In this document: positions 17,537-64,000 of the stretch, one piece after another
How positions within the stretch are numbered: position 1 is the stretch's first letter
Layout of the letters: the number at the start of each line of letters is the position of its first letter
IMG/VR virus record: IMGVR_UViG_3300033997_000092
Span: 124,001-188,000 of that record
Length of the DNA: 64,000 nucleotides
Direction: 5' to 3' (one strand)
Notes under the pieces: generated by a model
Told to the model about the DNA's origin: nothing
What the model saw: the letters and a program-made list of their open reading frames with translations, nothing else
Database searches by the model: none
Program-made: the position numbers and the translations under genes

Positions 17537-18192
17537 CACAAGAAAATCAATTAAATGGAACTGAATCCGCAGAAGCGGCTGAGTTGCGCCACGCCCGTGA
17601 ATTAATATCAAAGGCCGAAGATGTGATACAAAGACTTCGTGCCAGTTCTGACGTAGCCACTGAGGAGCTTGGCTCTGTTACAAGTAAGCTGCTTGACCTG
17701 CGTGTTGAACATCGCCTTTTAAAGTCCAAGCTTGATGCCACTTTATTCGACAAAGAAGCATTCAAGCAAAAGTGCGACAAGTTAGAAACAACTGTTAAAA
17801 ACTTGGAAGCCGAACTTGTCAAGCGTAGCACTCAGCTATTACGTGCTTCCAAGCGTAACCAAGAATCACTTGAATTATTTTCCAAGTGCGCTGTACTTTT
17901 CGCTTCTTATGTTTCAAGCTCGAAGCTTCCTGTTTATGTACTCACTCGCTTGAAAGAAATAAACTTTCCTAAGCCAAATACGATCCGTCGTGTTGTTGGT
18001 TTGCCTGCAGAAGCGTGTGCTGTAGAAGCTGTTAAGGTCGTGTTTGATCCGTTTAAGTCTATCAACAAAACTCCACCGACATTCACAAATTCAGATATGC
18101 CGATGGACTACTTCTTAAACGCATTTTATCACACCGTGTCTCCTATCGTTATTGAAGATGCGGAAGTGGCTGCTGGCGAGGAAGCCTCGTAA
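17533..18192 (+). CDS. Coiled-coil hypothetical protein
   Basis: 219-aa ORF with heptads. Confidence 0.65.
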   Translation: MTQENQLNGTESAEAAELRHARELISKAEDVIQRLRASSDVATEELGSVTSKLLDLRVEHRLLKSKLDATLFDKEAFKQKCDKLETTVKNLEAELVKRSTQLLRASKRNQESLELFSKCAVLFASYVSSSKLPVYVLTRLKEINFPKPNTIRRVVGLPAEACAVEAVKVVFDPFKSINKTPPTFTNSDMPMDYFLNAFYHTVSPIVIEDAEVAAGEEAS

Positions 18193-19208
18193 TGCTCGAA
18201 GGTAACCTTACTGGTGGCCAAATACAGGAAGTCATGGATAGGCTACTGTATGATGCACTCGCTCCTGTTATCAGATACACTAACGTATTTGACACCCAGC
18301 TTGTGTATCTTTTGGCTACCGTAACAAAGAATAAAAAGCGCAAGGTATGCGCTGTAAGCAGGCCTGAGACAATTGACTTTTTGTGTAAGGCACTTGCTAC
18401 TTCTGACCCAGAAGAAAAAATGATGTACATAAAGAAGTTGAAGATCGAACGCTCGTTCATTCACGTTTTCCTTAAACGGTTTGTTCAGGCGTATAAAGGT
18501 CCAATCTTCTCATTGTACTACCAGTTTATGTCAGACACTAAAAACAGACAGATATATTCCAAGCGCATGAAGCCTTATTTGGCAAGTGTTGGTTGTTCTG
18601 GCCGTTCCGAAATATTCATAGCGATAACTTCCTGTGAATCTAGTCTGACCCGTTTCTACCATTACTTCGACCGGGTCATTTCTCAGTATTACAAGCTGTG
18701 CTACTTAAAAGCAAAAGGCTTGGTTGATACTAATCCGAATAACAACTATGATTTCCATGACCTCGTGCAGAATTTAAGGCAGCGTACCATAACTGCCTTG
18801 AATAAGTACGATGCCTCTAATGGAGCCTTGACATCTTACATCAAGTGGTGGTTATTCAACAGCTTGACTTGTGGTAGTGGCCAGCATGAATACGGTTTGG
18901 CGTACACTGTTCCACAAAACGTAAAAAGAAAGTTGATGCAGTCTGACGGTCTTGGTGTCAACTTCTCTGTTAGTATGGACTCATTATTATCTGAATCTGA
19001 TGATGGTGAGAATTCAAACTTACACAACCTTATAGCTGGTGAGACTCCAGAGCTGGACGATGAAATCGCGTCCATATCGGAACTCAACCGTATGTATATG
19101 TTTGCCAAGAACGCTGACCCTCACGGCATAGCTAGACTGAGTTTAGAGCTGCCTGAAGTATTCAGTCCTAAAGAGTTGGCTAACATGCGTAAGACAACTG
19201 TGTTATAA
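18192..19208 (+). CDS. Phage sigma70-family RNA polymerase sigma factor
   Basis: Region-2-like DLVQNLRQRTITALNKYDASNGALTSYIKWWLFNSL, then YTVP and SVSMD. Confidence 0.7.
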   Translation: MLEGNLTGGQIQEVMDRLLYDALAPVIRYTNVFDTQLVYLLATVTKNKKRKVCAVSRPETIDFLCKALATSDPEEKMMYIKKLKIERSFIHVFLKRFVQAYKGPIFSLYYQFMSDTKNRQIYSKRMKPYLASVGCSGRSEIFIAITSCESSLTRFYHYFDRVISQYYKLCYLKAKGLVDTNPNNNYDFHDLVQNLRQRTITALNKYDASNGALTSYIKWWLFNSLTCGSGQHEYGLAYTVPQNVKRKLMQSDGLGVNFSVSMDSLLSESDDGENSNLHNLIAGETPELDDEIASISELNRMYMFAKNADPHGIARLSLELPEVFSPKELANMRKTTVL

Positions 19209-19258
19209 AAGCCGTATCTGTAAATAAACAGATCGATACTAAAAGCAAGGAGAAAACT

Positions 19259-20476
<1,218 letters not shown>

Positions 20477-23656: not shown

Positions 23657-23710
23657 GTTGTCTCTACTTAGTAATTTATATCTGTAAATAAACAAGTATA
23701 GATTACTAAC

Positions 23711-23787
23711 GGCCCCTTAGCTCAGTTGGTTAGAGCACTCCCCTCATAAGGGATTGGTCTCCAGTTCAAATCTGGAAGGGGCCACCA
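23711..23787 (+). tRNA. tRNA with CAU anticodon, most likely tRNA-Ile2 (lysidine, reads AUA)
   Basis: GGCCCCT/AGGGGCC acceptor stem as in enterobacterial ileX, D arm, CT-CAT-AA loop, TTCAAAT T loop, encoded ACCA; lacks initiator features. Confidence 0.9.
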
Positions 23788-34677: not shown

Positions 34678-34734
34678 CTCTGTTAACCGTAGCAAAAATA
34701 GGGTATTGACTTATCACCAATACCCTAGTATAAT
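34678..34734 (+). promoter_or_regulatory. Early sigma70-type promoter (copy 3)
   Basis: CTCTGTTAACCGTAGCAAAAATAGG..TTGACT-N17-TATAAT; 10-bp inverted repeat over the -35. Confidence 0.85.
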
Positions 34735-34807
34735 GTACCCATGCACAGCGCATAGAATACATAGATTACTGAGGGACTAAAGCAGATAGTATCTGTCCCA
34801 TAAGTAG

Positions 34808-34865
34808 TTCTATTAACCGTAGCAAAAATAGGGTATTGACTACGGGCACCTAACCCGTGTATAAT
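34808..34865 (+). promoter_or_regulatory. Early sigma70-type promoter (copy 4)
   Basis: Same box; TTGACT-N18-TATAAT. Confidence 0.8.
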
Positions 34866-34915: not shown

Positions 34916-35539
34916 ATGGCTATCAAACGCAAAAATATCGCAGGTAAGAAATCTTCAACTAAAGCAGCAAAAGCTGAAACTCAGGTGAAGTTGGTTAAAC
35001 CCAAGGCTTTGAAGAAAGTCAAAAAAGCTGATGCTGACAAAGGTGTAAATAAAGCACCACAAGCAGCTACTACCAAGCTGAATGCTAAGGCTAAAGAAAA
35101 GCTGACCAATTACTTGGCCACGCAAGGTGCCTTAGTTAGCACAATGTTTGCTGCTGTTGAAGAACACGGTGTTGATCGAGTATTGGCTGCTCTGGCTAAC
35201 ATCAAACCAGGTAAGCCTGCGAAAGAACCGAAAACAACTAAAGCTCCTAAAGACTCTAAAGCTAAGGTTGTGCAGTTCACACGTCCTGGTCGCGAGTTCC
35301 CTGTTTCTCTGAAAAAGCAAAAACAGGATTTTGCAACTATCAAAGACGGCTACCGTGATGCTATGGCTAAAGTGCCTAAAGAGCTGGGTGTTCGTATGAC
35401 ACACTTCAACAAAGTGATCACTGCGAACAAAGTCACCTTGTTAGTTTCTGGTGTTCGTCGTGTAGACGGCGTATGGTCGTTCACTGGTATCACTGCTGAC
35501 AACAAGAAAGCAAACGTACCAGTCGAATCTGTTTTGTAA
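34916..35539 (+). CDS. Lys/Ala-rich basic protein
   Basis: 207-aa ORF, GGAG RBS. Confidence 0.75.
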   Translation: MAIKRKNIAGKKSSTKAAKAETQVKLVKPKALKKVKKADADKGVNKAPQAATTKLNAKAKEKLTNYLATQGALVSTMFAAVEEHGVDRVLAALANIKPGKPAKEPKTTKAPKDSKAKVVQFTRPGREFPVSLKKQKQDFATIKDGYRDAMAKVPKELGVRMTHFNKVITANKVTLLVSGVRRVDGVWSFTGITADNKKANVPVESVL

Positions 35540-35626
35540 TACATGGTGGGTAATACCCACCTTTCTAATTCTGTAAATAAACCAACGTGATTCAAAAATC
35601 ACAAATATCAACTGTGGAGAGTTAAC

Positions 35627-37393
35627 ATGCCTAAAGTTAAAAGTAACTCAGGTTTAGTCGGTAAGTCAGTTGCACGTTTAGATGGTTCAACTGATAAGAT
35701 TATTGAAGTAATCGGCCGTGGTTACAAAACTAAGTCTGGCGGCCGCGCCATCAGCCCTGATTGCCTGGTGTCTGTCAAAGGTAAACTGACCGAAATCGAA
35801 CCTGTAAGCAAACGTCTGATCGAAGACTCAGGCAAAGGCTATGCGAAGCTGACCGAAGAAGCGCCAGCTAAAAAATCCAAGTCAGGTAAAGAAGAAAAAG
35901 CTTCTGGTAAATCTGGCGGTAAATCTGGCAAAGGCTCAGGCAGCAAATCTGGCAAAGATGAAAAGCCAGCTAAAGGCAAAGCTAAGAAAGCTGATGCCGA
36001 TGAAAAGCCAGCTAAAGGCAAAGCTAAACGTAAACAGGCCGAAGACGTTGATCTGGAAATGGACGATGATGTTCAGCAGGTAGAAATTGACGACATCAAC
36101 CAAAACCTGGCAAACGAAATCAATAAGCTGGCCAAAAACACACTGACTGCCGTGCTGAAAAAGCATTACAGCAACGTCACCGATGTTAAAGTGCAGGTAC
36201 AGTTCAATCCTGATAGTTCAGATGACAATCAGGTAGTGAACGTCAACTCCAGCGTGTTCATCGCTATGCCTCAGATGCCTGAGTTTGAAATGTCGAAAGC
36301 CGTTTCAAAAGTAGTGTTGGCCGGTGTGTGGGAAAAGCAAGTCGAAAAAGAAAGCAGCGTTGCTAAGAAAGTTGCTTCTCTGTTAGACCTGGACGAAGGT
36401 GTGTATCCTGAAGTTGGTTCAAGCCTGGTCGATGAAGATGGCAGCATGTTCTTCTTTGTTGGTATTCACAAAGACAAAAAGCATTTTGTCCTGCAGGACG
36501 AAGACGGTGCAGCGGTACTGTTGTTAACTGCCGACTTTGAAGCCTACGACATGCCTGTGTCTTCTGCTGCTCCTGAAGAGGAAGAGCTTGACCTGGACAT
36601 GGACGATGAAGACGAACTGGAACTGGATCTGGACGAAGACGATTCTGATGCCGACGGCGAAGACGAAGACGGTGTTGACGACGAAAGTGGTGACGATAGC
36701 GAAGACCCGTTAGAAGGCATGGATGAAAAGTCCATCGCTAAACTTCTGAAGAAGAAGTGGACACGTGCCCAGATGGAACAGTACCTGGATGATTACTTCG
36801 AGTTAGATGACGAAGAAATCGAAACCATTTCTGAACTTTCTGATGACGAGCTGGCCGACTACGTAGCTAACTACTGTGCTGCTGCGGATAACGCTGCCGA
36901 CGAAGAAGAGGAAGAGGAGTCTGACGAAGACGACGATTCTGGCCTGGACGAAGACTTCTCCGAAACTGACGAAGACGAAGACGAAGACTCCGACGACTCT
37001 GATGAAGAGGAAGAAGAGGAATCTGACGAAGATTCTGACGAAGACGAGGAAGAGGAGTCTGATGAAGATTCTGACGAAGACGAGGAAGAGGAGTCTGATG
37101 AAGATGAAGACGACTCGGATGCCGACGAAGAAGAGGAAGAGGAGGAAGAGGAGTCTGATGAAGACGACGAATCCATTGACGCCGATTACATCAACGGCCT
37201 GAGCGGTTCTGAACTGGCTACCTTCTACAATGAAAACAAACAGTCATTGCCTCCGATGCCTAAAGCTATCCGCAATCAGACAGATAAAAAGAAACGCAAA
37301 GCTGCTCTGGCTGCCTGGCTGATCGAAAACTTAGTCGAAGAAGACACCGATACTCTGGGTCTGGACGAAGACGAATTCGGCGACGACGAATAA
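35627..37393 (+). CDS. Very acidic low-complexity protein with basic N-terminal region
   Basis: 588 aa with long D/E tracts. Confidence 0.8.
   Translation: MPKVKSNSGLVGKSVARLDGSTDKIIEVIGRGYKTKSGGRAISPDCLVSVKGKLTEIEPVSKRLIEDSGKGYAKLTEEAPAKKSKSGKEEKASGKSGGKSGKGSGSKSGKDEKPAKGKAKKADADEKPAKGKAKRKQAEDVDLEMDDDVQQVEIDDINQNLANEINKLAKNTLTAVLKKHYSNVTDVKVQVQFNPDSSDDNQVVNVNSSVFIAMPQMPEFEMSKAVSKVVLAGVWEKQVEKESSVAKKVASLLDLDEGVYPEVGSSLVDEDGSMFFFVGIHKDKKHFVLQDEDGAAVLLLTADFEAYDMPVSSAAPEEEELDLDMDDEDELELDLDEDDSDADGEDEDGVDDESGDDSEDPLEGMDEKSIAKLLKKKWTRAQMEQYLDDYFELDDEEIETISELSDDELADYVANYCAAADNAADEEEEEESDEDDDSGLDEDFSETDEDEDEDSDDSDEEEEEESDEDSDEDEEEESDEDSDEDEEEESDEDEDDSDADEEEEEEEEESDEDDESIDADYINGLSGSELATFYNENKQSLPPMPKAIRNQTDKKKRKAALAAWLIENLVEEDTDTLGLDEDEFGDDE
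36992..37047 (+). repeat. 56-bp exact repeat, copy 1 (copy 2 at 39142-39197)
   Basis: GACGACTCTGATGAAGAGGAAGAAGAGGAATCTGACGAAGATTCTGACGAAGACGA present in two different genes. Confidence 0.9.
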
Positions 37394-37421
37394 TTCTTCT
37401 GTCCTGAATAGGAAGACTAAT

Positions 37422-37447
37422 AAGAGGGCACATCTGCTGCCCTCTTT
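37422..37447 (+). terminator. Probable terminator
   Basis: AAGAGGGCA/TGCCCTCTT stem with short T tail. Confidence 0.5.
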
Positions 37448-37456
37448 GGAGATTGC

Positions 37457-38749
37457 ATGTATCGTATTATTCCAAGTTTGGATATTGCTGCATTGACTCA
37501 ACTTATCTATTCCGGGTTTGTTGATGTTGCTGTACGCAATCAGGAAGACACGGACATTGCTATTCCATTAGCTCTGTCTGGATCGAAGTACGAAGTCGGT
37601 GCCAAAAACGTACAGAAACAATTTGCCCCACGTATATTAAAGTCGGACCTATTAGGTTTGTATAAACGTATGTGTCGCGGTTCGTTTCATGCGATTGATG
37701 TTATCAAACTTCTTTACCGTACAGGTATCGCTGTTCCAAAAAGCGAAGTCCTTACCGCGCTGTGGGCTGAAATGCCTGTTGACGGTTCGTTAGAGTTGCC
37801 AGATAATACAGTCCTGACGTTCGCTGATCTGAAAGCTGTGTTTAAAGAGCATCTACGTGCGGCATTCAAACGCAGTGGCATCTACTGCTATCCGAAAAAA
37901 TTCGTAGACTACTACGAAGACCTGTTTAAGTATGTTGAACCATCTAAACGGCCTTCTGGTGTACGGCTGAAAAATTTATTGGTCGTATCAGGCTGCGAAG
38001 CCGACGTTGTTCTGACCTACACTGTGTTTATGGGTAAACTCAGATTGACGTATGCTGGCGCTAAGCTAGGCACACGGATTTATGATATTACTCCTCAGTG
38101 TAAGATAAACCGAAGCATTCCAAACAATATGCCAAACACAATAACTAAAAAGCTCGAAGGCTTGAAAGTGTCCGTGTTCGGTAAATTTGTTTTCACTAAG
38201 GACGCACGTACACGTTTTGATAAAAGCCAACTTGATGCTGTTGTGGAAACCTTCGTTGGTTTGGATGTTGATTCTTACCAAGATACAAAGCTTGAACGGT
38301 TTGAATCTTCACATCCTATCAGGCCTTATTTACGCCGTTACGAAGAACGCTACGCATCGGCAAAAACATTCATAGCAGAACATGCTAAGAATAGTATCAA
38401 GCGTGACAAAGCCTCAAAGTTTGTTGCAGAGTATGATGCCAAACAGGCTGAGTACGACAAAGCAATAAGCGAATACCGCGCTAAGTTGCGTCAGGAAGAT
38501 CCAATTAAGTGTTTGCATTTCCTTGCATTCGACTTTGTTAAGTCTTCTACCAATTTAGACCGTACGGCAAAATTTGCTCCTGTTCGAGCCAAGTACCCGT
38601 CAGTTATAGAAAAACTGAAAGAGCTTGAGTTTGACACTATGCACGTTTCGTTCGACAATACTCCACTTAGCAAGAACCCGTATTGCTATAAAGGTGTTAT
38701 GCACCGAATCGAAGTAGACGGTATTCCTATGTGGATAAAAGAATCTTAA
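37457..38749 (+). CDS. Hypothetical protein with degenerate NAD-dependent DNA ligase adenylation-like domain
   Basis: VLTY..GKL...G...DIT......IP...V.G.F, LHFLAFD, LKELEF, Y.YKGVMHRI; no KxDG. Confidence 0.5.
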   Translation: MYRIIPSLDIAALTQLIYSGFVDVAVRNQEDTDIAIPLALSGSKYEVGAKNVQKQFAPRILKSDLLGLYKRMCRGSFHAIDVIKLLYRTGIAVPKSEVLTALWAEMPVDGSLELPDNTVLTFADLKAVFKEHLRAAFKRSGIYCYPKKFVDYYEDLFKYVEPSKRPSGVRLKNLLVVSGCEADVVLTYTVFMGKLRLTYAGAKLGTRIYDITPQCKINRSIPNNMPNTITKKLEGLKVSVFGKFVFTKDARTRFDKSQLDAVVETFVGLDVDSYQDTKLERFESSHPIRPYLRRYEERYASAKTFIAEHAKNSIKRDKASKFVAEYDAKQAEYDKAISEYRAKLRQEDPIKCLHFLAFDFVKSSTNLDRTAKFAPVRAKYPSVIEKLKELEFDTMHVSFDNTPLSKNPYCYKGVMHRIEVDGIPMWIKES

Positions 38750-38766
38750 ACCGAAAGGAAAAAGCT

Positions 38767-40488
38767 ATGTTACATCAAAATCTGATCAAACTGACCTCTG
38801 CCGAAATTCAGGAACTTTTACGTTCCGATGACCGTCCGAATTGGGCAACCTATGCTACGGACACACTGATTGAAGCCTCACTGGCTGTTGATTCAAACCT
38901 GTCCTTCTTCGACGTTAAGGATTACCGCGGTACTGCTGACCAGTGCGACACACGTAACCGCATGCTGGCTATCCAGTGTCTGGACAAATACTTCGATGGC
39001 GCTACTGCCAACGCTTCTGTTGACGTTGTTGAAGAAGTAGCTATTCAGGCTACTGCCGGTGCGGATGCTCAACCTGAAGTTGTTGATGTCGAAGAAGACT
39101 TCGATGAAGATGATTCTTCAGAAGACAGTGAAGAAGATTCTGACGACTCTGATGAAGAGGAAGAAGAGGAATCTGACGAAGATTCTGACGAAGACGACTC
39201 CGAAACTGAGCTTATGGAAATCATCGAACTTCTGGAGCAGCCTGTTCAGACGCTTGCGGATGTCCTTATCGAATCTCTTGACGAAGAACAGTTAAGCGAT
39301 TTAACTGAAATTCTGGTCGAACACATTGACGGTGATGACAGCGACGACGAAATCGATCTCGATGATGACGAAGACGACGAAGACAGCGACGAAGGTGATG
39401 AAGACGGTGAGTTTGATAACCTGTCCGATGTATTCTACGCCGACCAATCATCTATCGCTGCTAACCTGGTAATCGTGTTGTCTGCCGCCGATACGGCTGA
39501 ATTGTTCCCACACCGCAACGCTTTAGCGACAGTTAAATCTGTCGATGTTGCTGGCGAAGATGTCATTGTTGATATGGTGCGTGGTCTTACTGGTTTGAGC
39601 CAGACTGACACTAACGCAGACAACCGTAAAGGTTTACTGGTTCCTGGCCTGATCGAAGCGTTTGAGCATGTAGAACATTTCAACTCACGCGACCTGTTAG
39701 TTGCTGCTGGTAGTTCGAGCCAGTTCGTCCGTGCAGTTAATGCGCTTGCTGCGCGTTTAAGTGATGAAGTTCTGGTAAGCTTCCAGAACAGCTTCGACAA
39801 CTTAGGTCTGGCTGACTTTAACCTGGAAACTGAAAACGGTTCTTTCAACGCCGGTTCTTTCGTCAGTGTCCGTGCAAGTGTAGCTCCAGTTACTTCTGAT
39901 TCTACCGTAAGCACGGCTATCACTGTGTTTGTTCAGTTGCGTATTCCTGGCATGTTCGTTACACGTTTACGTGATACTTACATCCAGTCTATTGTTGATT
40001 ATGTTGAATCCAATGACATCAACACTCCGGTTACTTTAATGGTTTCCGCGAACGCTACTGATTTGCTGTTTAACAACAAACTGGTTGCCCCAGCAACACC
40101 TAAGAATCCGGCAAAAACTTACGACCTTCAGAACATCCTGAAGCAAACTGAAACTACGCAGATGTACGGCTTCCAGACGTTCAGTATGCCTCAGTTGCTG
40201 GATATTGCTGAATCGTTGAACCGTGCCCACGAAAGTGATTTGATTCTGGACTCCGATGACAGTAATGACATCGAATCTCTGGACATTGACTCTACTGTTG
40301 GCGGCAGCACGATTCCAGAAGCAGACTTCAATCTCAGCATCCTGCCGCTGAATGGCTCAGCTACAGGTATTCTGCCGTGGGGTGATACTCACGTTATGAT
40401 TGCTGATTTGAACGCTGGTAGCGTTGAAGAAGACGAAGAAGGTGATTCTGACGACATGGAAGGCCTGGACTTCTCTGACGACGAATAA
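38767..40488 (+). CDS. Acidic hypothetical protein
   Basis: AAGGA RBS; D/E tracts plus a folded-looking C-terminal half. Confidence 0.8.
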   Translation: MLHQNLIKLTSAEIQELLRSDDRPNWATYATDTLIEASLAVDSNLSFFDVKDYRGTADQCDTRNRMLAIQCLDKYFDGATANASVDVVEEVAIQATAGADAQPEVVDVEEDFDEDDSSEDSEEDSDDSDEEEEEESDEDSDEDDSETELMEIIELLEQPVQTLADVLIESLDEEQLSDLTEILVEHIDGDDSDDEIDLDDDEDDEDSDEGDEDGEFDNLSDVFYADQSSIAANLVIVLSAADTAELFPHRNALATVKSVDVAGEDVIVDMVRGLTGLSQTDTNADNRKGLLVPGLIEAFEHVEHFNSRDLLVAAGSSSQFVRAVNALAARLSDEVLVSFQNSFDNLGLADFNLETENGSFNAGSFVSVRASVAPVTSDSTVSTAITVFVQLRIPGMFVTRLRDTYIQSIVDYVESNDINTPVTLMVSANATDLLFNNKLVAPATPKNPAKTYDLQNILKQTETTQMYGFQTFSMPQLLDIAESLNRAHESDLILDSDDSNDIESLDIDSTVGGSTIPEADFNLSILPLNGSATGILPWGDTHVMIADLNAGSVEEDEEGDSDDMEGLDFSDDE

Positions 40489-40640
40489 TCGCTCCTGGTG
40501 CGCTGGGTAGAAATACCCAGCTTTCCTTAATCTGTAAATAACTATGTAAGATTCGCTGTTTTTGAATTTGATTCTGTAAATGATAATTCAGTAATTCAGT
40601 AAATCGAGCCAACAACCAACACCGATAAAAAGGAACTGTT

Positions 40641-41168
40641 ATGTCTAAAGACAAAAAATCGCTGCCTGCGAAGACCGGCGGAGCGCAACGTCCAAGTCGC
40701 TTAAACAAAGTGATTAAGAAACTGGATAAAATCTCTGCACTGTCCGACACAAAAGGCCTGCCGTTTAATATCCGCGTTATCGCACGTAACGCACCTACTG
40801 AAATCAGCGGTATCATTATCAGCCTGGACAACGCTCTGACTATTCAGGGCACACGTCACGGTTCTTCAAAAGAAGAAGTGACCAGTATTCCTCTGAACAA
40901 AATCATTAGCATTGTAGGTGGTGTTAATCAGCCTTCAATCGTTACTTATCGCGGCGATGCAGTTCTGATGCAGACCAAGCGCGGTACTCTGACTCCTAAA
41001 GTTATCGGCGGTCAGTCTGTTTATCACATCATGGACAAAGTCACTGGTGACGAAATCGTTGTGTTTAACCATGACGATATTACAGTTGAAGCAAAAGGCG
41101 ATCCTAACGAGATCCGCGAATCTTCTGCTGCGAAAAAGAAAAAGCCAGGCTTTAAGAAAGCCAAGTAA
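40641..41168 (+). CDS. Hypothetical beta-rich basic protein
   Basis: 175 aa, AAGGA RBS. Confidence 0.75.
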   Translation: MSKDKKSLPAKTGGAQRPSRLNKVIKKLDKISALSDTKGLPFNIRVIARNAPTEISGIIISLDNALTIQGTRHGSSKEEVTSIPLNKIISIVGGVNQPSIVTYRGDAVLMQTKRGTLTPKVIGGQSVYHIMDKVTGDEIVVFNHDDITVEAKGDPNEIRESSAAKKKKPGFKKAK

Positions 41169-41274
41169 TTCTGACTCAGGGTTCTTGTTAGAATCCTGAA
41201 TCTGTAAATCTGAATTTGGAAGATACACTCTTTCCCAAATAAGTGTTACGTAACAATAAAGAAGGAAAACCAAA

Positions 41275-41739
41275 ATGGCTAAAGCCAAGAAAACGAAGTT
41301 AAGCCCAATCGCTCAGGCCCTGTTAGCTGCTCTGTCTGCTGCTGTTGAAGAAGGTCTGTTGACTGCTGCACAAATCGCTGAAGCTGCCGGTATCGAAGCC
41401 GAAGAAGAAGCTCCTGCGAAAGGCAAAGGCAAAGGCAAAGCTGAAAAAGCTCCTGCGAAAGGCAAAGGCAAAGGCAAAAAAGCTGCCGACGAAGACGAAG
41501 ACGATGACGACGATGATGACGGTGACGACGACGAAGATGGCGATGACGACGAAGACGAAGACTTCGACCGTGATGAAGCCATCGAAACTCTGGTTGAAGC
41601 CGGTCACAAAAAGGCCAAGCTGAAAAAGCTGGATGACGAAGAACTCCAGGAAATGCTGGACGAGCTGGAAGACGAAGACGGTGATGATGACGACGATGAC
41701 GACGACTTCGATGACGAAGACGACGAAGACGACGAATAA
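41275..41739 (+). CDS. Small protein with KG repeats and poly-Asp/Glu tracts
   Basis: APAKGKGKGK repeats and acidic tracts. Confidence 0.8.
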   Translation: MAKAKKTKLSPIAQALLAALSAAVEEGLLTAAQIAEAAGIEAEEEAPAKGKGKGKAEKAPAKGKGKGKKAADEDEDDDDDDDGDDDEDGDDDEDEDFDRDEAIETLVEAGHKKAKLKKLDDEELQEMLDELEDEDGDDDDDDDDFDDEDDEDDE

Positions 41740-41822
41740 CATCTGATCTGCCTGGTACAAGAACCGTAAATTAAAAACAATGGGCAGTTTAACACACTGC
41801 CCAATTTTCTGGAAAAACGAAA

Positions 41823-42272
41823 ATGAAACAACTGAAGAAAATCGGGAGTTCAGCAACCCGTCTGTTAAAGATTGCTGATGCACTGGACAAACAAGCAGAA
41901 GCGTTACGCGCTGAAGCGAATGCAATCACCGGTCAGGTAGCCGAAGCTTCAGGTGCTGAAGCTCCTGCTAAAGGCAAAGGCAAAAAAGCTGAAAAGCCTG
42001 CCAAAGCTGAAAAAGCCGAAAAGTCTGGCAAAGGCAAAAAAGACAAAAAGGCTGAAAAAGCAGCTAAGTCTGAAAAAGCCGAAAAGTCTGGCAAAGGCAA
42101 AAAGGACAAAAAGGCTGAAAAAGCTGAAGCTGCTGAAAAGCCGGCCAAGTCTAAAAAAGACAAAAAGGCCGCTAAGTCTGAAAAGCCTGGTAAAGGCAAA
42201 AAGGACAAAAAATCAAAAAAGCCTGAAGGGGCCGATACTGAGGATTTCGACTTCGGCGATGAAGACGAGTAA
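41823..42272 (+). CDS. Histone H1-like Lys/Ala-rich protein
   Basis: N-terminal coiled coil plus AEKSGKGKKDKK repeats. Confidence 0.75.
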   Translation: MKQLKKIGSSATRLLKIADALDKQAEALRAEANAITGQVAEASGAEAPAKGKGKKAEKPAKAEKAEKSGKGKKDKKAEKAAKSEKAEKSGKGKKDKKAEKAEAAEKPAKSKKDKKAAKSEKPGKGKKDKKSKKPEGADTEDFDFGDEDE

Positions 42273-45238: not shown

Positions 45239-45628
45239 ATGTACTACGTTCTCCTTGATGTAACATGCAGTCCAGTGGAGACAGCGGACTTACGATTCGT
45301 TCAGTCTCCATCACTGGTTACTTTTTGGTTCTGTGTAGAGAAACTCCCGACATATTTAATGATTGCTTCGTTGATGGTTCTTGATAGCGAAGGCAATATA
45401 TTGAAGTCTGTATGGGACAGTTACAAAAAGACCGTTGATGCGTATACACTTGATTTAATCGACAGTATATGTATTGACGGCACAACAACTGATTTCTCAA
45501 AATACATAGATCCTTCTGGTATGCCAAATCTCGGTTACGATTCATTCTATGATTCGGATTTAATATACGAACGCAAACGAGAGATGTTGCCGCGTATAAA
45601 CAACATACTTTCAACAATATTGAAGTGA
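45239..45628 (+). CDS. Hypothetical protein
   Basis: 129 aa, GAGG RBS. Confidence 0.6.
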   Translation: MYYVLLDVTCSPVETADLRFVQSPSLVTFWFCVEKLPTYLMIASLMVLDSEGNILKSVWDSYKKTVDAYTLDLIDSICIDGTTTDFSKYIDPSGMPNLGYDSFYDSDLIYERKREMLPRINNILSTILK

Positions 45629-60306: not shown

Positions 60307-60738
60307 ATGGATACTTTGTTTAGCTTCTACAATCTTGATGTAGCAAAACTTAAACGTGTGACCTTCTTAAATTCATCAGGTAGTGTTCCTGCTGAAATCA
60401 TGGAAGTTCTCAACGAATTTGCCGACAATATCGACGAACATTTTGATATTGGCCAGGCGACTGATTACGAAACTGCTGAGCCTCTAATGGAAGCTTTGCA
60501 GGAATTTCTGATTGTCAACGGTGTCATGGACGATCCTTCAGAGCTGGACATTGATGAAGACGACGAAGATGCAGAACTTCCGCTGCCTCCAGTCATGATA
60601 GAATCAGTTGTCCGTCTGCGCGTAGGTAATGAAGTTAAATTCCTTATCCACGTTATGGATCCAGACAGTGATATGTACGATGACGAAGAAGAAGACATCA
60701 GTTTTGATGATGACGAAGAAGAGGAAGACTTCGAGTAG
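60307..60738 (+). CDS. Acidic hypothetical protein
   Basis: 143 aa, D/E-rich. Confidence 0.7.
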   Translation: MDTLFSFYNLDVAKLKRVTFLNSSGSVPAEIMEVLNEFADNIDEHFDIGQATDYETAEPLMEALQEFLIVNGVMDDPSELDIDEDDEDAELPLPPVMIESVVRLRVGNEVKFLIHVMDPDSDMYDDEEEDISFDDDEEEEDFE

Positions 60739-60809: not shown

Positions 60810-61124
60810 ATGTTTGTTCAACTTGTACATGAATCCGTGTTAACTGTCGGCCATTATCTTAACAATGTTCAAAACGGTATTTATACGGTTATGTTGGTTC
60901 CGGTAGATTCTAGGGAAGATGCTGTTATACGTCTACGCGCTTTTAGTGACCGTATTCGCCAAAAGCTTCCTGCTATGGACAGTCCTGAGCTAACTGCCTA
61001 TTGTTGTGGTAGCAATCCTATCAAATGTTGTGGTAAGCTACATAGTCATATAGAATCGGTTATCGCACAGGCAAATCCAAAGACGCCTAAAGTTATAGAT
61101 CATAGACGGGACTGGCAAAAATGA
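60810..61124 (+). CDS. Hypothetical protein
   Basis: AGGTGA RBS before ATG 60810. Confidence 0.55.
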   Translation: MFVQLVHESVLTVGHYLNNVQNGIYTVMLVPVDSREDAVIRLRAFSDRIRQKLPAMDSPELTAYCCGSNPIKCCGKLHSHIESVIAQANPKTPKVIDHRRDWQK

Positions 61125-61468
61125 AAATACTTGTAGCTATCTCTGGTGCTGGTGCTGCCAAATCTGTAAATAGTGTAGTAAGAAAAGACGGTAAGATCCA
61201 TTACGCGGGTTTAGTGTTCCCTGACTTCGATAAACCCATTGTCTTAAAGTCAGGCAAACACAAACGTGCCGTACTTGCTAAGAAAGGGAAGTTCTTTAAG
61301 TTGGTTCGCTATGGTAGAGTTGGATATGAAGATTTTACCACCCACAAAGACAAAGAAAGACGCGATAGATTTCGTGCCCGCTTTCGTGGCATCCTAACTA
61401 AAGAAGGGAAGCCTGCTTACAAAGATAAATGGACCGCCGCACACTGGGCTTACTACGACTTATGGTGA
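61121..61468 (+). CDS. Basic protein of a family shared with giant viruses/cyanophages (DUF5754-like)
   Basis: VRYGRVGYEDFTTHKDKERRDRFRARF...DKWTAAHWAYYDLW. Confidence 0.6.
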   Translation: MKILVAISGAGAAKSVNSVVRKDGKIHYAGLVFPDFDKPIVLKSGKHKRAVLAKKGKFFKLVRYGRVGYEDFTTHKDKERRDRFRARFRGILTKEGKPAYKDKWTAAHWAYYDLW

Positions 61469-61471
61469 TAT

Positions 61472-61912
61472 ATGGTTACTGAACTTGTTTTCGGATGTGG
61501 ATGTGTCAAACCAACAAAGCGCGAACCGTTAAAAGCCTCTACTTCTCGTTGTCCTGTACATGGTCATGGAGTAGTAGCATTGACATCGGGTAAGCGTTTG
61601 CGTAACAAGCTCGACACTAAAAAGTTGAAAGCTGTATGCTGTCCTTTGGCAGAATTCACACATGAAGACAGTTTGGTAATTGTTGATTGTTCAAAACCCC
61701 TCAAGGTACTACAAAAACAAGTAACAGGAAAACACGTTGTTTACAAAGATGCTAAGTCATTGGCAGTCCTGTCTCTATGTATCTCATTTGCTAAGTCTGT
61801 TACTGTTCATACACGGAGCCCTTTAGTATTCCGTATGTGTAAATATCCAGATAGCATAACTTCGATGACGCCTAATGGTTCAGGTAAATACGATGTCAAA
61901 AAAGCAAGCTAA
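61472..61912 (+). CDS. Hypothetical Cys-rich protein
   Basis: CGC...CPVHG. Confidence 0.6.
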   Translation: MVTELVFGCGCVKPTKREPLKASTSRCPVHGHGVVALTSGKRLRNKLDTKKLKAVCCPLAEFTHEDSLVIVDCSKPLKVLQKQVTGKHVVYKDAKSLAVLSLCISFAKSVTVHTRSPLVFRMCKYPDSITSMTPNGSGKYDVKKAS

Positions 61913-62867
61913 AAATATACCGATCCTTGACGTTATAGATGCGTACAATTGGTTGAATCGCGCTTACTTCTCTGCTCCCAAACTCACTACCAAAGCTGGT
62001 GAGCCTACTGGTGCAGTTAAAGGTTTCGTTAATATGGTCAACAGCCTTATTAAAAAGCGCATTGAAAAATATGGTGTGTGTTACTTGGTTGTTGCTTTTG
62101 ACAGCAACAAAGGAAAGAACTGGCGCCACCAATACACCGCTGACTTCCTTTCAAAGAACAAGAAGCACATAGGTGTAATGCCTACAGATACCGACAAAGG
62201 ATATAAAGGCACACGGTTAAAAGATGAAACAAAATCATCTGAACTTAATCCACAAATTGAATTGGCTAAACAGGTACTTGCTGCCCGTGGAATCGTTTGC
62301 TTAGAATCTCCAAGATACGAAGCAGATGACATCATAGGTACTCTTGCCTTACACGCCAGTCCTAAAACGTACAACCTTATGATATGGAGCCGTGATAAAG
62401 ATTTCGCGCAGCTACTTTCTAGGAATGTACGCATAACACAGCAAGCTCAAGGTAATACCAAAGAGATTGTTGTGACACGCATGAACTGCAAAGAAGTCTA
62501 CGGTGTACTTCCAAAACACGTTATACCTTATCTGGCCATGTGCGGAGATAAGTCTGACAATGTTCCTGGTATACCTGGAATAGGACCAGCTAAAGCAGTA
62601 GAGCTGATTGCCTTACATGAGAACAGTGAAGATCTCATGTCTTCGATTTTCGCAGGATCTTATACAAAAGGACTTCAAAAGAAACTTACCGATCCAGTCA
62701 ACCAAAAGTTGTATTATATGTCGGAGACTTTAGTTTCTATTTGCACAGATGTACCAAACGTACCTACAAAATTAAGTGAGTATCGTCTTGGTAAACTTTC
62801 AAACCACATGAAACAACTAAACAAACTTGCCAAGCGTTGGGAGTTTACACAGTTGTTTACCGTTTAG
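61893..62867 (+). CDS. 5'-3' exonuclease / flap endonuclease (Pol I N-terminal-like)
   Basis: IDAYNWLNRAYFS, AFD, YKGTR, YEADDIIGTLA, SRDKDFAQL, GDKSDNVPGIPGIGP. Confidence 0.92.
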   Translation: MSKKQAKNIPILDVIDAYNWLNRAYFSAPKLTTKAGEPTGAVKGFVNMVNSLIKKRIEKYGVCYLVVAFDSNKGKNWRHQYTADFLSKNKKHIGVMPTDTDKGYKGTRLKDETKSSELNPQIELAKQVLAARGIVCLESPRYEADDIIGTLALHASPKTYNLMIWSRDKDFAQLLSRNVRITQQAQGNTKEIVVTRMNCKEVYGVLPKHVIPYLAMCGDKSDNVPGIPGIGPAKAVELIALHENSEDLMSSIFAGSYTKGLQKKLTDPVNQKLYYMSETLVSICTDVPNVPTKLSEYRLGKLSNHMKQLNKLAKRWEFTQLFTV

Positions 62868-62879
62868 CAGGAATAATAT

Positions 62880-64000
62880 ATGAGCGAAGCACATCAAGTA
62901 CAAGGTGAAATCCAATGTGAAGATCAGGTCCAGGGTCACGTTCCTGGAACCCAGGTTAAGCCTGTAGAAATACAGACAGCTTTCATACCTGCACCTGAAC
63001 CAGACCATGCACCTGACGAAACTTACGCTATTTCAAATGATCCGGTTGAGCATTACCGCAAAACTGATCTTACCCCGCACATGGTGTCTGTGTCTCTGAT
63101 CGGTGGTACGTCTGTTGATCCTGAAATTGTTGAAGCAGAAGCCGAAGGCCAGTTAGCTGTTTTAGGCGAAACACAGGTAGAAGTATTGGAAGACGTGGAT
63201 AGTGAAGAGGTCCATGAACCTGTTGACGACCAAGCAGCCGTTGGTCTTGCTGTGCAGACTGAACAGCGTCCTGCTAAACGTAAGAACAAAAACAAATTGA
63301 CCACTCGTAATACTCCTATTGCACAAAACAGTTACAAGCCTGCAGGCAATGAATTGAAAGCAGCGTCTCCTGGTAGTTTGCAGCAATTGGCGGAACGGTT
63401 CAACAACAACGTAGACATTCCATCTCCAATCGATTACGTTGTTTATAGCAGCGTCGGTTACCTGAGCGCTGTCATGACACGTCCTCACCCGGACATGGTA
63501 AAGGCTTCTGCTGAATACAATGCCGGTGACGCGACTGCAAAACGCCGTATGCTTATCCAAACAGAGCAACATGCAGTTGATGTTATGGTTCTTACATCGA
63601 CAGTGTTCGGCAGTTTCAGTAATTGTGGTCGTCCTATCGCAAACAACTACAAAGACTTCGTTAATATGGTGCGTAGTGACCGCGAACCTAAAGCTAAGCG
63701 TTTAGGTCGTATTTCGTTCATGCGTTATGACGCGCAGAACACACGTAAGTTCCTGGCAGCCGCCTTCGTTCAATACAATGACGGCAGCCGCAATCCAGAA
63801 GATGCTACAACTGTCAACTTGAATGCGTTGCGTAAATCTCTGGTCAAAATCTTTGAAACATTCCGCAATGTACGCATCGGTATTATGTTCTTTGGTGACG
63901 ATCAGCACAAGCCTACTCACTGGTCTGAGATTGAATCGGTGATTGAAGCTGTGTGCCGTGAAAACAAACGGCAAGTAACTGTCTTTGTTCACAGCCGTGT
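62880..64000 (+). CDS. Hypothetical protein with C-terminal macrodomain-like segment (partial, runs off window end)
   Basis: Manual translation from ATG 62880 (AGGA RBS) is open to the end: ...LGRI...AAAFVQYNDG...NLNALRKSLVKI...RIGI...HWSEIESVIE...VTVF. Confidence 0.55.
   Translation, partial: MSEAHQVQGEIQCEDQVQGHVPGTQVKPVEIQTAFIPAPEPDHAPDETYAISNDPVEHYRKTDLTPHMVSVSLIGGTSVDPEIVEAEAEGQLAVLGETQVEVLEDVDSEEVHEPVDDQAAVGLAVQTEQRPAKRKNKNKLTTRNTPIAQNSYKPAGNELKAASPGSLQQLAERFNNNVDIPSPIDYVVYSSVGYLSAVMTRPHPDMVKASAEYNAGDATAKRRMLIQTEQHAVDVMVLTSTVFGSFSNCGRPIANNYKDFVNMVRSDREPKAKRLGRISFMRYDAQNTRKFLAAAFVQYNDGSRNPEDATTVNLNALRKSLVKIFETFRNVRIGIMFFGDDQHKPTHWSEIESVIEAVCRENKRQVTVFVHSR

What the first reader, a model, noticed from the sequence alone, without database searches (positions are those of the whole stretch)
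34916..42272. Cluster of extreme polyanion/polycation proteins: possible condensate, nucleoid or DNA-mimic system
Seen: of seven adjacent genes, two encode H1-like Lys/Ala-rich proteins, two encode ~580-aa proteins with long D/E tracts, and one is a block polyampholyte. They are fed by early and CTGTAAAT promoters. Many other proteins in the window also have Lys-rich arms (SSB, ParB-like, RecA, GyrA, DnaX, zincin). Inference: acidic scaffolds recruit Lys-tagged replication proteins into a membraneless replication compartment, or act as histone-chaperone-like or DNA-mimic anti-defence factors.
Basis: inference. Interest (0 to 1): 0.65.

Follow-up and report, generated by a model that had tools for sequence, protein, structure and literature searches.

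The report
Alternating-charge protein module in jumbo phage
A giant bacteriophage carries seven neighbouring genes whose mostly disordered proteins alternate between strongly positive and strongly negative charge; the set is conserved in related phages and shares a promoter motif with the DNA-replication genes, so it probably organises replicating phage DNA, though no function has been tested.

Summary
Seven same-strand genes (34916-42272) encode proteins with net charges of +28, -126, +15, -113, +13, -44 and +16. Two are Lys/Ala-rich, two are about 580 aa with long D/E tracts, and one is a blocky polyampholyte (kappa 0.55).

The window lies in a complete 261-kb jumbo phage of the Lu11/PaBG/NCTB/Y3 ("Lupandier") group. 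The charge pattern and gene order for six of the seven genes recur in five other genomes with only 20-45% protein identity. dN/dS against a close relative is 0.03-0.14. The acidic tracts change length only by in-frame indels.

CTGTAAAT is a genuine, conserved promoter-like motif. Elsewhere in the genome it precedes the polymerase, ligase, primase, helicase, clamp-loader and RNase H genes, but not the tail-sheath gene. The module therefore belongs to the replication regulon.

AlphaFold2 shows small folded domains strung on disordered Lys-rich and acidic linkers. No known family matches any of the seven proteins. A conserved acidic-aromatic tip (E-D/E-F-D-F) ends the last protein.

Best reading (confidence about 0.38): an electrostatic "phage chromatin" or replication-factory module. 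Condensate formation, DNA binding and mutual binding are all untested. Virion-internal and anti-defence decoy roles remain open.

The parts
34706..34865 (+). Two sigma-70-like promoters (TTGACT-17/18-TATAAT, 11 of 12 each) upstream of gA
   Evidence: Similar -35/-10 pairs lie upstream of the gA homologues in L016 and L019.
34916..35539 (+). gA: 207-aa polycation (net +28, pI 10.3) with a Lys/Ala-rich N-terminal arm, a short helical part, a Lys/Pro linker and a C-terminal folded part
   Evidence: 89% identical in L013, dN/dS 0.10. Homologues in L016 and L019. No Pfam, PHROG or NCBIfam match.
35545..35561 (+). Terminator-like hairpin after gA
   Evidence: present in L013 and L016.
35571..35578 (+). 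CTGTAAAT promoter-like motif, 56 nt upstream of gB
   Evidence: Conserved at the same site in L013, L019 and L017; CTGTAAAC in L016.
35627..37393 (+). gB: 588-aa multidomain polyanion (net -126). Layout in residues: beta-barrel D1 1-78; Lys-rich disordered linker 79-148; alpha/beta D2 150-312; acidic tract 315-360; helical D3 361-428; acidic tract 433-513 (bases 36923-37165, length-polymorphic); helical D4 515-572; acidic tip with Phe.
   Evidence: AlphaFold2, mean pLDDT 73, domains above 90. phrog_33433 E 1e-23. Family of 40 clusters among 1.84 billion representatives. In-frame indels. dN/dS 0.10.
37422..37446 (.). GC-rich hairpin between gB and gC
   Evidence: an equivalent hairpin is present in L013, L016 and L019.
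37457..38749 (+). gC: 430-aa basic (net +15) protein without extreme tracts, fold unknown
   Evidence: Homologues in NCTB (26% identity), L016, L019, L017 and Y3. dN/dS 0.07. No family or PDB match.
38767..40488 (+). gD: 573-aa polyanion (net -113) with a helical N-terminal part, two acidic tracts, a large folded part (about residues 214-551) and an acidic tip ending G-L-D-F-S-D-D-E. The alternative GTG start at 38731 is less likely.
   Evidence: Its start overlaps the end of gC by 4 nt in L019 and L017.
40502..40521 (+). Terminator-like hairpin after gD
40532..40581 (+). Two CTGTAAAT motifs (40532-40539 and 40574-40581) upstream of gE
   Evidence: The pair is conserved in L013 and L016; CTGTAAAT plus TGTAAAT in L019; CTGTAAA variants in NCTB and Y3.
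40641..41168 (+). gE: 175-aa basic protein (net +13) with Lys-rich N and C tails around small beta-barrels. It is the most constrained gene of the set.
   Evidence: 98% identical in L013, dN/dS 0.03. AlphaFold2 core pLDDT about 80-89. Weak matches to small beta-barrels, Z 5.3 or lower.
41202..41209 (+). CTGTAAAT motif upstream of gF
   Evidence: Conserved in L013, L016 and Y3; TGTAAAT in L019.
41275..41739 (+). gF: 154-aa block polyampholyte (net -44, kappa 0.55) with an N-terminal helix, a K/G block, a poly-D/E block, a basic helix-loop-helix-like motif and a second poly-D/E block
   Evidence: phrog_38176. Homologues of 139-294 aa with 42-63% D+E in five other genomes.
41781..41803 (.). Hairpin between gF and gG
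   Evidence: hairpins lie at the same place in L016, L019 and NCTB.
41823..42272 (+). gG: 149-aa Lys/Ala/Glu-repeat polycation (net +16) with an N-terminal amphipathic helix. Its C-terminal acidic-aromatic tip (bases 42240-42269) contains E-D-F-D-F.
   Evidence: phrog_38087 E 3e-14. E140, F142, D143 and F144 are invariant in four divergent phages; variants in L019 and L017.
19259..20476 (+). Phage SSB, outside the finding's coordinates. Its C-terminal about 150 aa alternate four poly-Asp blocks with four Lys/Ser blocks. It is preceded by CTGTAAAT at 19218 and is a candidate client or partner of the module (inferred).
   Evidence: phrog_15004 E 2e-115, profile covered to its end; kappa 0.43.

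Best explanation
The seven genes form a conserved module of the phage's replication regulon. I propose that it builds an electrostatically held nucleoprotein assembly, a 'phage chromatin' or replication factory, on replicating phage DNA.

Proposed mechanism:
- The polycations (gA, gE, gG, perhaps gC) bind phage DNA through their Lys-rich arms and small beta-barrel or helical domains.
- The multidomain polyanions (gB, gD, gF) bind those arms through long, disordered D/E tracts punctuated by Phe. They may also bind the Lys-rich tails of SSB, topoisomerase, ParB-like protein, recombinase and clamp loader.
- The polyanions thereby act as chaperones and bridges that keep the polycation-DNA complex fluid and concentrate the replisome.
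- The conserved acidic-aromatic tips act as short docking motifs.

Shown here: the genes are real and under purifying selection; order, charge sign and domain-plus-linker architecture are conserved across distant relatives; they share a promoter motif with replication genes; the charged stretches are predicted to be disordered.

Inferred only: DNA binding, polyanion-polycation binding, recruitment of Lys-tailed enzymes, and any phase separation.
For: 1. Conservation. The same gene order and charge pattern hold for gB to gG (- + - + - +) in six genomes with 20-45% protein identity: the window, L016, L019, L017, NCTB and Y3. A basic gA homologue is clear only in L016 and L019.
2. Selection. dN/dS against a close relative is 0.03-0.14. 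Only in-frame indels (+9, +3, -3 nt; an 84-aa length difference) occur in the gB acidic tract.
3. Regulation. CTGTAAAT is enriched. It lies 27-113 nt upstream of genes for DNA polymerase, NAD ligase, RNase H, primase, DnaB, clamp loader, SSB and a tRNA. It is conserved at the same intergenic sites of the module in distant relatives. The tail-sheath gene lacks it and carries TAATTTA instead, which is absent from the module.
4. Architecture. AlphaFold2 gives gB four confident small domains separated by Lys-rich and acidic stretches with pLDDT below 50. The gE core is a small beta-barrel of the general SH3/Sm/Tudor shape found in many nucleic-acid binders.
5. Blockiness. Kappa is 0.43-0.55 for gB, gF and the SSB.
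6. Sticker-like residues. Phe is the most enriched non-acidic residue inside the acidic tracts (2.7-fold). 30 of 54 acidic family members end in an acidic-aromatic tip. The E-D/E-F-D-F tip of gG is invariant in four phages.
7. Lys-rich tails occur on six DNA-metabolism proteins.
8. Precedent: phase separation drives the phage SPO1 transcription programme (PMC13401047).
Against: - No experiment and no expression data exist; the holding runs are metagenome contigs only.
- No domain has a significant match to a known DNA-binding family. The best scores are Foldseek E 0.02-0.08 and VIA Z 6.9 or lower, which is within noise.
- The one complex prediction run (gC with the gD core) gave no answer.
- Extreme-charge proteins also occur elsewhere in the genome, including near structural genes.
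- Lys-rich tails could simply raise non-specific DNA affinity with no link to the acidic proteins.
- Virion proteomics for this lineage could not be mapped onto the module.
- In PaBG the module is not next to the topoisomerase genes.
Confidence: 0.38

Rival explanations
1. The genes are independent DNA-replication accessory adaptors with no joint assembly. Each protein tethers something to DNA or to the replisome through its folded domains. The acidic tracts would serve as solubilising or auto-inhibitory tails, as in HMGB1 or SSB tails, and the alternating charge would have no collective meaning.
For: The module is in the replication regulon. Its proteins have modular small domains. An acidic tail next to a basic region in one chain (gB, gF, gG, SSB) fits intramolecular auto-inhibition. 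There is no computational evidence of mutual binding (one search gave no answer).
Against: Strict conservation of order and charge pattern for gB to gG across six genomes, and the 4-nt gC/gD overlap in two of them, suggest a co-functioning set. Very long tracts (net -113 to -126) exceed what auto-inhibition of the short basic parts would need.
Confidence: 0.22
2. The proteins are virion-internal or packaging proteins. Polycations and polyanions would be packed with, or help to condense, the 261-kb genome in the head, like T4 internal proteins and peptides or the phiKZ inner body (comparison from my own knowledge), or would be ejected with the DNA.
For: Extreme charge suits DNA counter-ion or scaffold roles. 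Jumbo phages carry many virion proteins of unknown function; PaBG has several unassigned bands (PMC7412058 Table 1). The Y3 virion mass-spectrometry paper was not readable here.
Against: The module uses the promoter motif of the replication genes, not the motif seen before the sheath gene. It lies inside the replication module, between the repair and topoisomerase genes. In the Y3 and NCTB records all members are annotated only as hypothetical or 'phage protein'. None of the 14 PaBG virion bands could be assigned to it.
Confidence: 0.15
3. The module is a host-takeover or anti-defence decoy. The acidic tracts would act as nucleic-acid mimics that soak up host nucleoid proteins or DNA-sensing defence proteins. 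The polycations would displace host proteins from DNA or shield phage DNA from nucleases.
For: The module includes very acidic proteins. gA has host-type (early-like) promoters. Acidic phage proteins that mimic DNA are an established class (my own knowledge: Ocr, ArdA, Arn).
Against: The acidic tracts are predicted to be disordered and vary in length, unlike rigid DNA-shaped mimics. There is no Pfam or PHROG link to known anti-defence families. Most members use the replication-type motif rather than early promoters. Counter-defence genes are usually variable, whereas this module is a conserved core feature of the lineage.
Confidence: 0.13

Closest known systems
Polyelectrolyte pairs of eukaryotic chromatin (linker histone H1 with prothymosin-alpha; nucleoplasmin/nucleophosmin with basic proteins). 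Comparison from my own knowledge.
   Same: Lys/Ala-rich disordered polycations appear beside long D/E-tract polyanions. Both sets have high net charge, and the acidic tracts are interrupted by a few hydrophobic or aromatic residues. The acidic partner keeps the basic, DNA-binding partner soluble and mobile.
   Different: There is no sequence or fold relationship. No winged-helix linker-histone domain was found, and no nucleoplasmin-like core appeared among the fold matches. The context is a phage, and seven separate genes alternate in charge.
Phage-driven phase separation: SPO1 Gp27 (PMC13401047), and the ChmC RNA-binding protein of nucleus-forming jumbo phages (bioRxiv 10.1101/2023.09.22.559000)
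   Same: These are phage-encoded modular proteins reported to form condensates that concentrate nucleic-acid machinery during infection.
   Different: They are single drivers acting on transcription or RNA, not a multi-gene polyanion/polycation set. No homology is known. Here phase separation is only inferred.
Acidic C-terminal tips of single-strand DNA-binding proteins (E. coli SSB ends D-D-D-I-P-F; T7 gp2.5 and T4 gp32 have acidic tails). From my own knowledge.
   Same: An acidic stretch with Phe lies at or near the C-terminus of a DNA-associated protein. In those systems the tip is a docking site for partner enzymes and folds back on the protein's own basic surface.
   Different: In gG, gB and gD the Phe is usually not the last residue. 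The carrier is a Lys/Ala-repeat or multidomain protein, not an OB fold. This phage's own SSB ends in a Lys-rich block instead.
Bacterial H1-like Lys/Ala/Pro-repeat proteins (Pseudomonas AlgP, chlamydial Hc1, PhaF C-terminal domain). From my own knowledge.
   Same: They share low-complexity K/A(/P/E) repeats of the kind that bind DNA non-specifically. An NCTB homologue of gG was mis-annotated, probably because of such repeats.
   Different: gG adds a conserved N-terminal helix and the acidic F-D-F tip, and sits in a fixed operon-like module with polyanions. Homology was not tested beyond the Pfam, PHROG and NCBIfam scans, which gave no match to a family of known function.

Membership tests
Linker histone H1/H5 | Globular winged-helix domain (Pfam Linker_histone) | tested here: not met
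   No Pfam match for gA or gG at E up to 0.1; NCBIfam gave none.
Linker histone H1/H5 | Lys/Ala-rich disordered basic tail | tested here: met
   gG has K 28.9% and A 19.5%. gA has K 17.9% and A 14.0%, concentrated in its arms.
SAP / HeH (helix-extended loop-helix) DNA-binding motif | Significant match to the SAP, HeH or Rho_N profiles | tested here: inconclusive
   Ten C-terminal segments of gB and gF relatives were scanned. Only one gave a sub-threshold SAP hit (E 0.13, 12.4 bits against a cut-off of 23.9). AlphaFold2 predicts helical D3 and D4. D3 matches the Rho N-terminal domain at Z 5.0, which is within noise.
Tudor / SH3-like small beta-barrel (gB D1, gE core) | Five-stranded small barrel superposable on solved members | tested here: inconclusive
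   gB D1 against the PHF1 Tudor domain: Foldseek probability 0.96, TM 0.57 over 53 residues, but E 0.08. gE against integrase C-terminal domain, WYL, Hfq and CarD-type barrels: Z 3.6-5.3, below the noise mark of 8.
Nucleoplasmin / NAP-type histone chaperones | Characteristic folded core (pentameric beta-sandwich or NAP fold) | tested here: inconclusive
   No such chain appears among the listed Foldseek or VIA matches of the gB model. gD was not folded, and the lists do not exclude unlisted families.
Nucleoplasmin / NAP-type histone chaperones | Long acidic tracts | tested here: met
   In gB, 30-residue windows reach 85% or more D/E. Net charges are -126 (gB) and -113 (gD).
DNA-mimic anti-restriction proteins (Ocr, ArdA type) | Rigid folded scaffold displaying carboxylates with DNA-like spacing | tested here: not met
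   The gB acidic tracts have pLDDT below 50 and change length between close relatives. No Pfam or PHROG match to such families.
SSB C-terminal tip | Acidic tail ending in a C-terminal hydrophobic residue (Phe) whose free carboxylate is bound | tested here: not met
   gG ends ...E-D-F-D-F-G-D-E-D-E. Its homologues end F-D-F followed by one to three more residues. Only some gB and gF relatives end in F or W.
Chimallin-type phage nucleus (Chimalliviridae) | PhuZ tubulin | tested here: not met
   No Pfam Tubulin match in the complete genome at E up to 0.1.
Chimallin-type phage nucleus (Chimalliviridae) | Chimallin shell protein | not tested
   I had no profile accession or reference sequence to search with.
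Condensate scaffolds (functional class) | Multivalent, blocky, oppositely charged disordered regions | tested here: met
   Kappa is 0.43 (gB), 0.55 (gF) and 0.43 (SSB). Disorder is predicted by AlphaFold2.
Condensate scaffolds (functional class) | Demonstrated phase separation in vitro or in infected cells | not testable with these tools
   This needs purified proteins and imaging.
Virion-internal (head) proteins | Co-regulation with structural genes | tested here: not met
   The module carries the CTGTAAAT motif of the replication genes. The sheath gene carries TAATTTA, which is absent from the module.
Virion-internal (head) proteins | Presence in purified virions | not testable with these tools
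   The PaBG band list (PMC7412058 Table 1) could not be mapped to the module. The Y3 proteomics paper is not in the library.

The most novel reading that the evidence does not exclude
Jumbo phages of the Lu11/PaBG/NCTB/Y3 lineage, in which no PhuZ tubulin was found (chimallin itself was not tested), would build a membraneless, shell-less replication compartment by complex coacervation. A dedicated seven-gene set of alternating polyanions and polycations would condense on phage DNA. Lys-rich terminal tails would work as a general 'address label' that partitions replisome enzymes into it, and acidic-Phe tips would serve as docking motifs.
Probability: 0.2. Interest if true: 0.85.

Novelty: new variant of a known kind. 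Interest (0 to 1): 0.6.

Why it matters
If the module organises replicating DNA electrostatically, it would be a second way for giant phages to build a replication compartment, alongside the protein-shelled phage nucleus. It would also be a compact, genetically separable model of polyanion-polycation assembly in bacteria. Cultured relatives on Erwinia, Dickeya and Pseudomonas make it directly testable. It would further explain why so many replication proteins in this lineage carry Lys-rich tails. If instead the proteins turn out to be packaged or to act as decoys, they would still define a conserved core feature of a widespread but little-studied jumbo-phage group.

Tried and rejected
Searches that found nothing useful:
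- Megablast of the region against phage records: no match.
- Pfam, PHROGs and NCBIfam on all seven proteins and on their homologues: only PHROGs of unknown function.
- PDB sequence search for gA, gC and gE: nothing.
- Word-index homologue search for gC: only one 88%-identical relative.
- IMG/VR locus scans with gC and with a gE alignment: nothing. One alignment was too divergent to seed a scan.
- tblastn of gC and gE against phages: only NCTB for gC.
- ESM Atlas look-alikes for gC and gE: scores below 0.8, and the Atlas's own models are poor.
- Foldseek and VIA searches on the gB and gE models: no match above noise.
- SAP/HeH membership: not supported by Pfam.
- Literature searches found no description of this module.

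Tests that gave no answer:
- Complex prediction of gC with the gD core (residues 210-552): ipSAE 0.00, verdict 'no answer'. This is neither for nor against binding.
- Mapping the module onto PaBG virion bands. The gB profile does not hit PaBG by sequence, and the PaBG topoisomerase neighbourhood lacks the module.
- Expression evidence. All holding runs are metagenome contigs, and the 'RNA-Seq' labels are guesses, so nothing can be said about transcription.

Idea rejected: that the low-complexity ORFs are artefacts. The dN/dS values, the in-frame indels and the synteny argue against it.

Full report
**What the window is.** The window is bases 124001-188000 of a single 261,032-bp virus record with direct terminal repeats, judged complete. 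Its topoisomerase II large subunit is 49% identical to that of phage NCTB. It is 44% identical to those of Erwinia phages of the Y3 and pEa_SNUABM type and of Yersinia phage fHe-Yen9-02. These phages belong to the group that one paper calls "Lupandier": Lu11, PaBG, NCTB and the Dickeya and Erwinia jumbo phages (PMC7412058). Near-identical DNA occurs in subsurface metagenomes, which are the probable source, and in wastewater metagenomes. The host is unknown. No tubulin (PhuZ) gene was found.

**Check of the observation.** The seven + strand ORFs are as described. Net charges run +28 (gA), -126 (gB), +15 (gC), -113 (gD), +13 (gE), -44 (gF) and +16 (gG). The two Lys/Ala-rich proteins are gA (K 17.9%, A 14.0%) and gG (K 28.9%, A 19.5%). 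The two long acidic proteins are gB (588 aa) and gD. The block polyampholyte is gF, with a charge-segregation parameter kappa of 0.55.

The start of gD is better placed at ATG 38767, giving 573 aa. The collection's own gene call and all close relatives begin there.

With my own simple ORF caller, 13 of 311 proteins have an extreme acidic or basic tract, and four of them fall in these seven genes. The permutation p is about 0.01 and depends on the thresholds. Within one genome the clustering is therefore only modestly significant. The case rests on conservation.

**Conservation.**
- A close relative assembled from public runs (L013) is 88-98% identical in the folded parts. Its gB is 84 residues shorter, all of the difference lying inside the acidic tracts.
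- dN/dS against it is 0.10 (gA), 0.10 (gB), 0.07 (gC), 0.14 (gD) and 0.03 (gE).
- Wastewater contigs are about 99.7% identical. They differ in the gB acidic tract only by indels of +9, +3 and -3 bases. Assemblies break at about 36971-37160.
- Four more distant genomes carry the same genes in the same order: a 251-kb contig (L016, gB 43% identical), a 168-kb contig (L019), a 100-kb metagenome scaffold (L017) and NCTB (L002). Y3 (L001) keeps the order but has extra genes interposed.
- In all of these, gB to gG keep the same charge signs (- + - + - +), and sizes are mostly similar. A basic gA homologue is clear only in L016 and L019.
- In L019 and L017 the start of gD overlaps the end of gC by four bases.
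- In the window, L016, L019 and NCTB the module lies upstream of the topoisomerase II genes, separated from them by two or three small genes. In L016 and L019 it lies downstream of a UvdE-type repair gene. In PaBG the topoisomerase neighbourhood is different.

**The gB family.** A profile of the first 330 residues of gB was searched against 1.84 billion representative proteins. It found only 40 clusters at E up to 0.001. Almost all share the plan of an N-terminal domain, a Lys-rich linker near residues 70-110 and one or more D/E tracts. They end either in a basic helix-loop-helix-like motif or in an acidic tip containing Phe or Trp. A few members are net basic, and Y3 gp316 is a basic paralogue with the same N-terminal domain. 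A structure search in the viral library recovers the NCTB, Yoloswag, PaBG and Dickeya JA13 homologues, all uncharacterised.

**Regulation.**
- CTGTAAAT occurs 15 times in the window against 3.1 expected and 30 times in the genome. Nineteen copies are intergenic, mostly 27-113 nt upstream of a start codon and in the gene's orientation.
- It is one of only two strongly enriched upstream word families in the genome.
- The genes it precedes include the clamp loader, primase, DnaB-type helicase, SSB and a ParB-like gene in the window. Outside the window it precedes NAD-dependent ligase, two DNA-polymerase ORFs and RNase H. It also precedes a tRNA gene.
- In the module it precedes gB, gE (twice) and gF.
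- It is found at the same intergenic places in L013, L016, L019 and L017. Variants (CTGTAAAC, CTGTAAAA) occur in NCTB and Y3, whose proteins are only 20-40% identical.
- gA is preceded by two near-consensus sigma-70-type promoters.
- The tail-sheath gene has a different upstream word, TAATTTA, about 35 nt before its start. That word is absent from the module.
- The genome encodes two proteins with a sigma-70 region 2. One lies just upstream of the SSB gene. PaBG is reported to carry its own sigma factor (PMC7412058).

I conclude that the module belongs to the replication ("middle") regulon. Which polymerase or sigma factor reads the motif is not known.

**Structure.** AlphaFold2 on gB with 39 family sequences gives a mean pLDDT of 73. 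Four confident domains emerge: D1 1-78, a beta-barrel; D2 150-312, alpha/beta; D3 361-428, four helices; and D4 515-572, helical. The Lys-rich linker (79-148), the two acidic tracts (315-360 and 433-513) and the tip are all below pLDDT 50.

Foldseek against the PDB finds nothing at E below 0.001. D1 resembles Tudor domains (PHF1, probability 0.96, TM 0.57 over 53 residues, E 0.08; also the UvrD C-terminal Tudor domain). The exhaustive aligner gives a best Z of 6.9, below the tool's own noise mark of about 8. D3 resembles the Rho N-terminal domain at Z 5.0, and part of D2 resembles spindlin and Mfd barrels at Z 4.5-4.7. These are leads, not assignments.

gE was folded with five sequences (mean pLDDT 68, core about 80-89). 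It shows small beta-barrels flanked by Lys-rich tails. Its weak matches (Z 3.6-5.3) are to integrase C-terminal, WYL, Hfq, CarD-type and PriB barrels. The ESM Atlas points to YolD-like and RimP C-terminal barrels. No Pfam, NCBIfam or functionally annotated PHROG family matches any member or its homologues.

**Short motifs.**
- The last residues of gG contain E-D/E-F-D-F. E140, F142, D143 and F144 are invariant in four phages, and variants occur in L019 and L017.
- gB ends D-E-D-E-F-G-D-D-E and gD ends G-L-D-F-S-D-D-E.
- Across 54 acidic family members, Phe is the most enriched non-acidic residue inside the acidic tracts (2.7-fold). Thirty of the 54 end in an acidic stretch containing an aromatic residue.
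- In L017 the gF homologue repeats an acidic unit around a single Phe five times.
- The basic motif in gF and at the end of many gB relatives looks like a SAP/HeH motif. Pfam gives only one sub-threshold SAP hit (E 0.13) in ten segments, so membership is not shown.

**The wider charge theme.** The SSB (phrog_15004, E 2e-115, matched to the end of the profile) carries a roughly 150-residue tail. In it, four poly-Asp blocks alternate with four Lys/Ser blocks, and the tail ends in Lys/Arg. Lys-rich tails are also present on the following:
- the ParB-like protein, at both ends
- a peptidase, at the N-terminus
- the topoisomerase A subunit, at the N-terminus (a basic N-terminus is also present in NCTB)
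- the clamp loader, at both ends
- the UvsX-like recombinase, at the N-terminus

A further, wholly H1-like 235-aa K/A/P protein lies just outside the window.

**Interpretation.** The following is shown: a conserved, selected, replication-co-regulated set of alternately charged proteins, in which small folded domains are joined by disordered polycationic and polyanionic stretches.

The most economical mechanism is electrostatic. Polycations sit on phage DNA. Multidomain polyanions bind them, and possibly also the Lys tails of replisome proteins, acting as chaperones or bridges. The acidic-Phe tips act as docking motifs. Such mixtures are the classic recipe for complex coacervates, and phase separation has now been reported for phage SPO1 (PMC13401047). 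DNA binding, mutual binding and condensation are nevertheless all inferences, so I put this reading at about 0.38.

The rivals are:
- independent replication adaptors whose acidic tails are auto-inhibitory or solubilising (0.22)
- virion-internal or packaging proteins (0.15; disfavoured by promoter class and position, but not excluded without proteomics)
- host-takeover or anti-defence decoys (0.13; disfavoured by disorder, length variability and core conservation)

**Novelty.** The searches of the paper library found no description of this module. All database homologues are uncharacterised. The physical principle is known from eukaryotic chromatin chaperones and viral factories, so I rate the module as a new variant of a known kind. 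If experiments show a shell-less replication compartment addressed by Lys tails, the rating could rise.

**Limits.**
- Gene calls outside the module come from a simple longest-ORF script.
- The gE alignment is shallow.
- The single complex prediction gave no answer.
- No transcript or protein data exist for this phage.

Noticed in passing
window 19259-20476 (+): The phage SSB (phrog_15004) has a C-terminal tail of about 150 aa made of four poly-Asp blocks (about 12-23 residues each) alternating with Lys/Ser-rich blocks. It ends in a Lys/Arg block instead of the usual acidic tip. Kappa is 0.43.
   Followed up: partly
window 18192-19208 (+); also G000:C1:250543-250761 (+): Two phage genes carry a sigma-70 region 2 (PF04542, E 4e-6 and 3e-18). 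One lies immediately upstream of the SSB gene. They are candidates for reading the CTGTAAAT and/or TAATTTA promoter classes.
   Followed up: no
G000:C1:117703-118410 (-), about 6 kb before the window: A 235-aa protein made almost wholly of Lys/Ala/Pro-rich repeats (K+R about 34%). It begins M-A-I-K-K-K, like gA, and has weak low-complexity similarity to gA (E 4e-5 without composition correction).
   Followed up: partly
genome-wide; e.g. upstream of G000:C1:55853-57475 (-) (tail sheath) and window 45239-45628 (+): A second enriched upstream word, TAATTTA, lies about 35 nt before the start codons of the sheath gene and about a dozen other genes. It may be a separate (late?) promoter class.
   Followed up: partly
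window 23682-23760 (+): A CTGTAAAT motif lies directly upstream of what reads like the start of a tRNA gene, so the motif also seems to drive tRNA expression. ARAGORN was not run.
   Followed up: no
window 11955-12377 (+) and 60307-60738 (+): Two more small, very acidic proteins (140 and 143 aa). The first sits just before the Lys-tailed ParB-like gene. The second ends in an acidic-aromatic tip (…E-E-E-D-F-E), like the module's acidic members.
   Followed up: no
G000:C1:76735-78480 (-) and 60959-63061 (-): Two further proteins with long acidic tracts lie outside the window. One is 581 aa (phrog_35607, unknown function), next to the NAD-ligase gene, with a K/E-rich coiled part followed by a D/E tract. 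The other is a 700-aa ATPase (phrog_20988).
   Followed up: no
L001 13619-14854 (Erwinia phage Y3 gp316): A net-basic paralogue of gB: the same N-terminal beta-barrel domain followed by Lys-rich sequence instead of acidic tracts. This shows that the domain can be coupled to tails of either charge.
   Followed up: no
L019 18517-20943: The topoisomerase II large-subunit gene of this relative is 808 aa and carries faint intein-splicing Pfam hits, suggesting an intein insertion.
   Followed up: no
window 36971-37160: Public assemblies from four runs all break inside the GAA/GAT/GAC-rich repeat that encodes the second acidic tract of gB. The tract length given for this window may therefore itself be uncertain.
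   Followed up: partly
L002 12356-12940 (phage NCTB BN7874_079): The gG homologue is annotated in GenBank as 'Large-conductance mechanosensitive channel'. This is almost certainly a low-complexity artefact.
   Followed up: no
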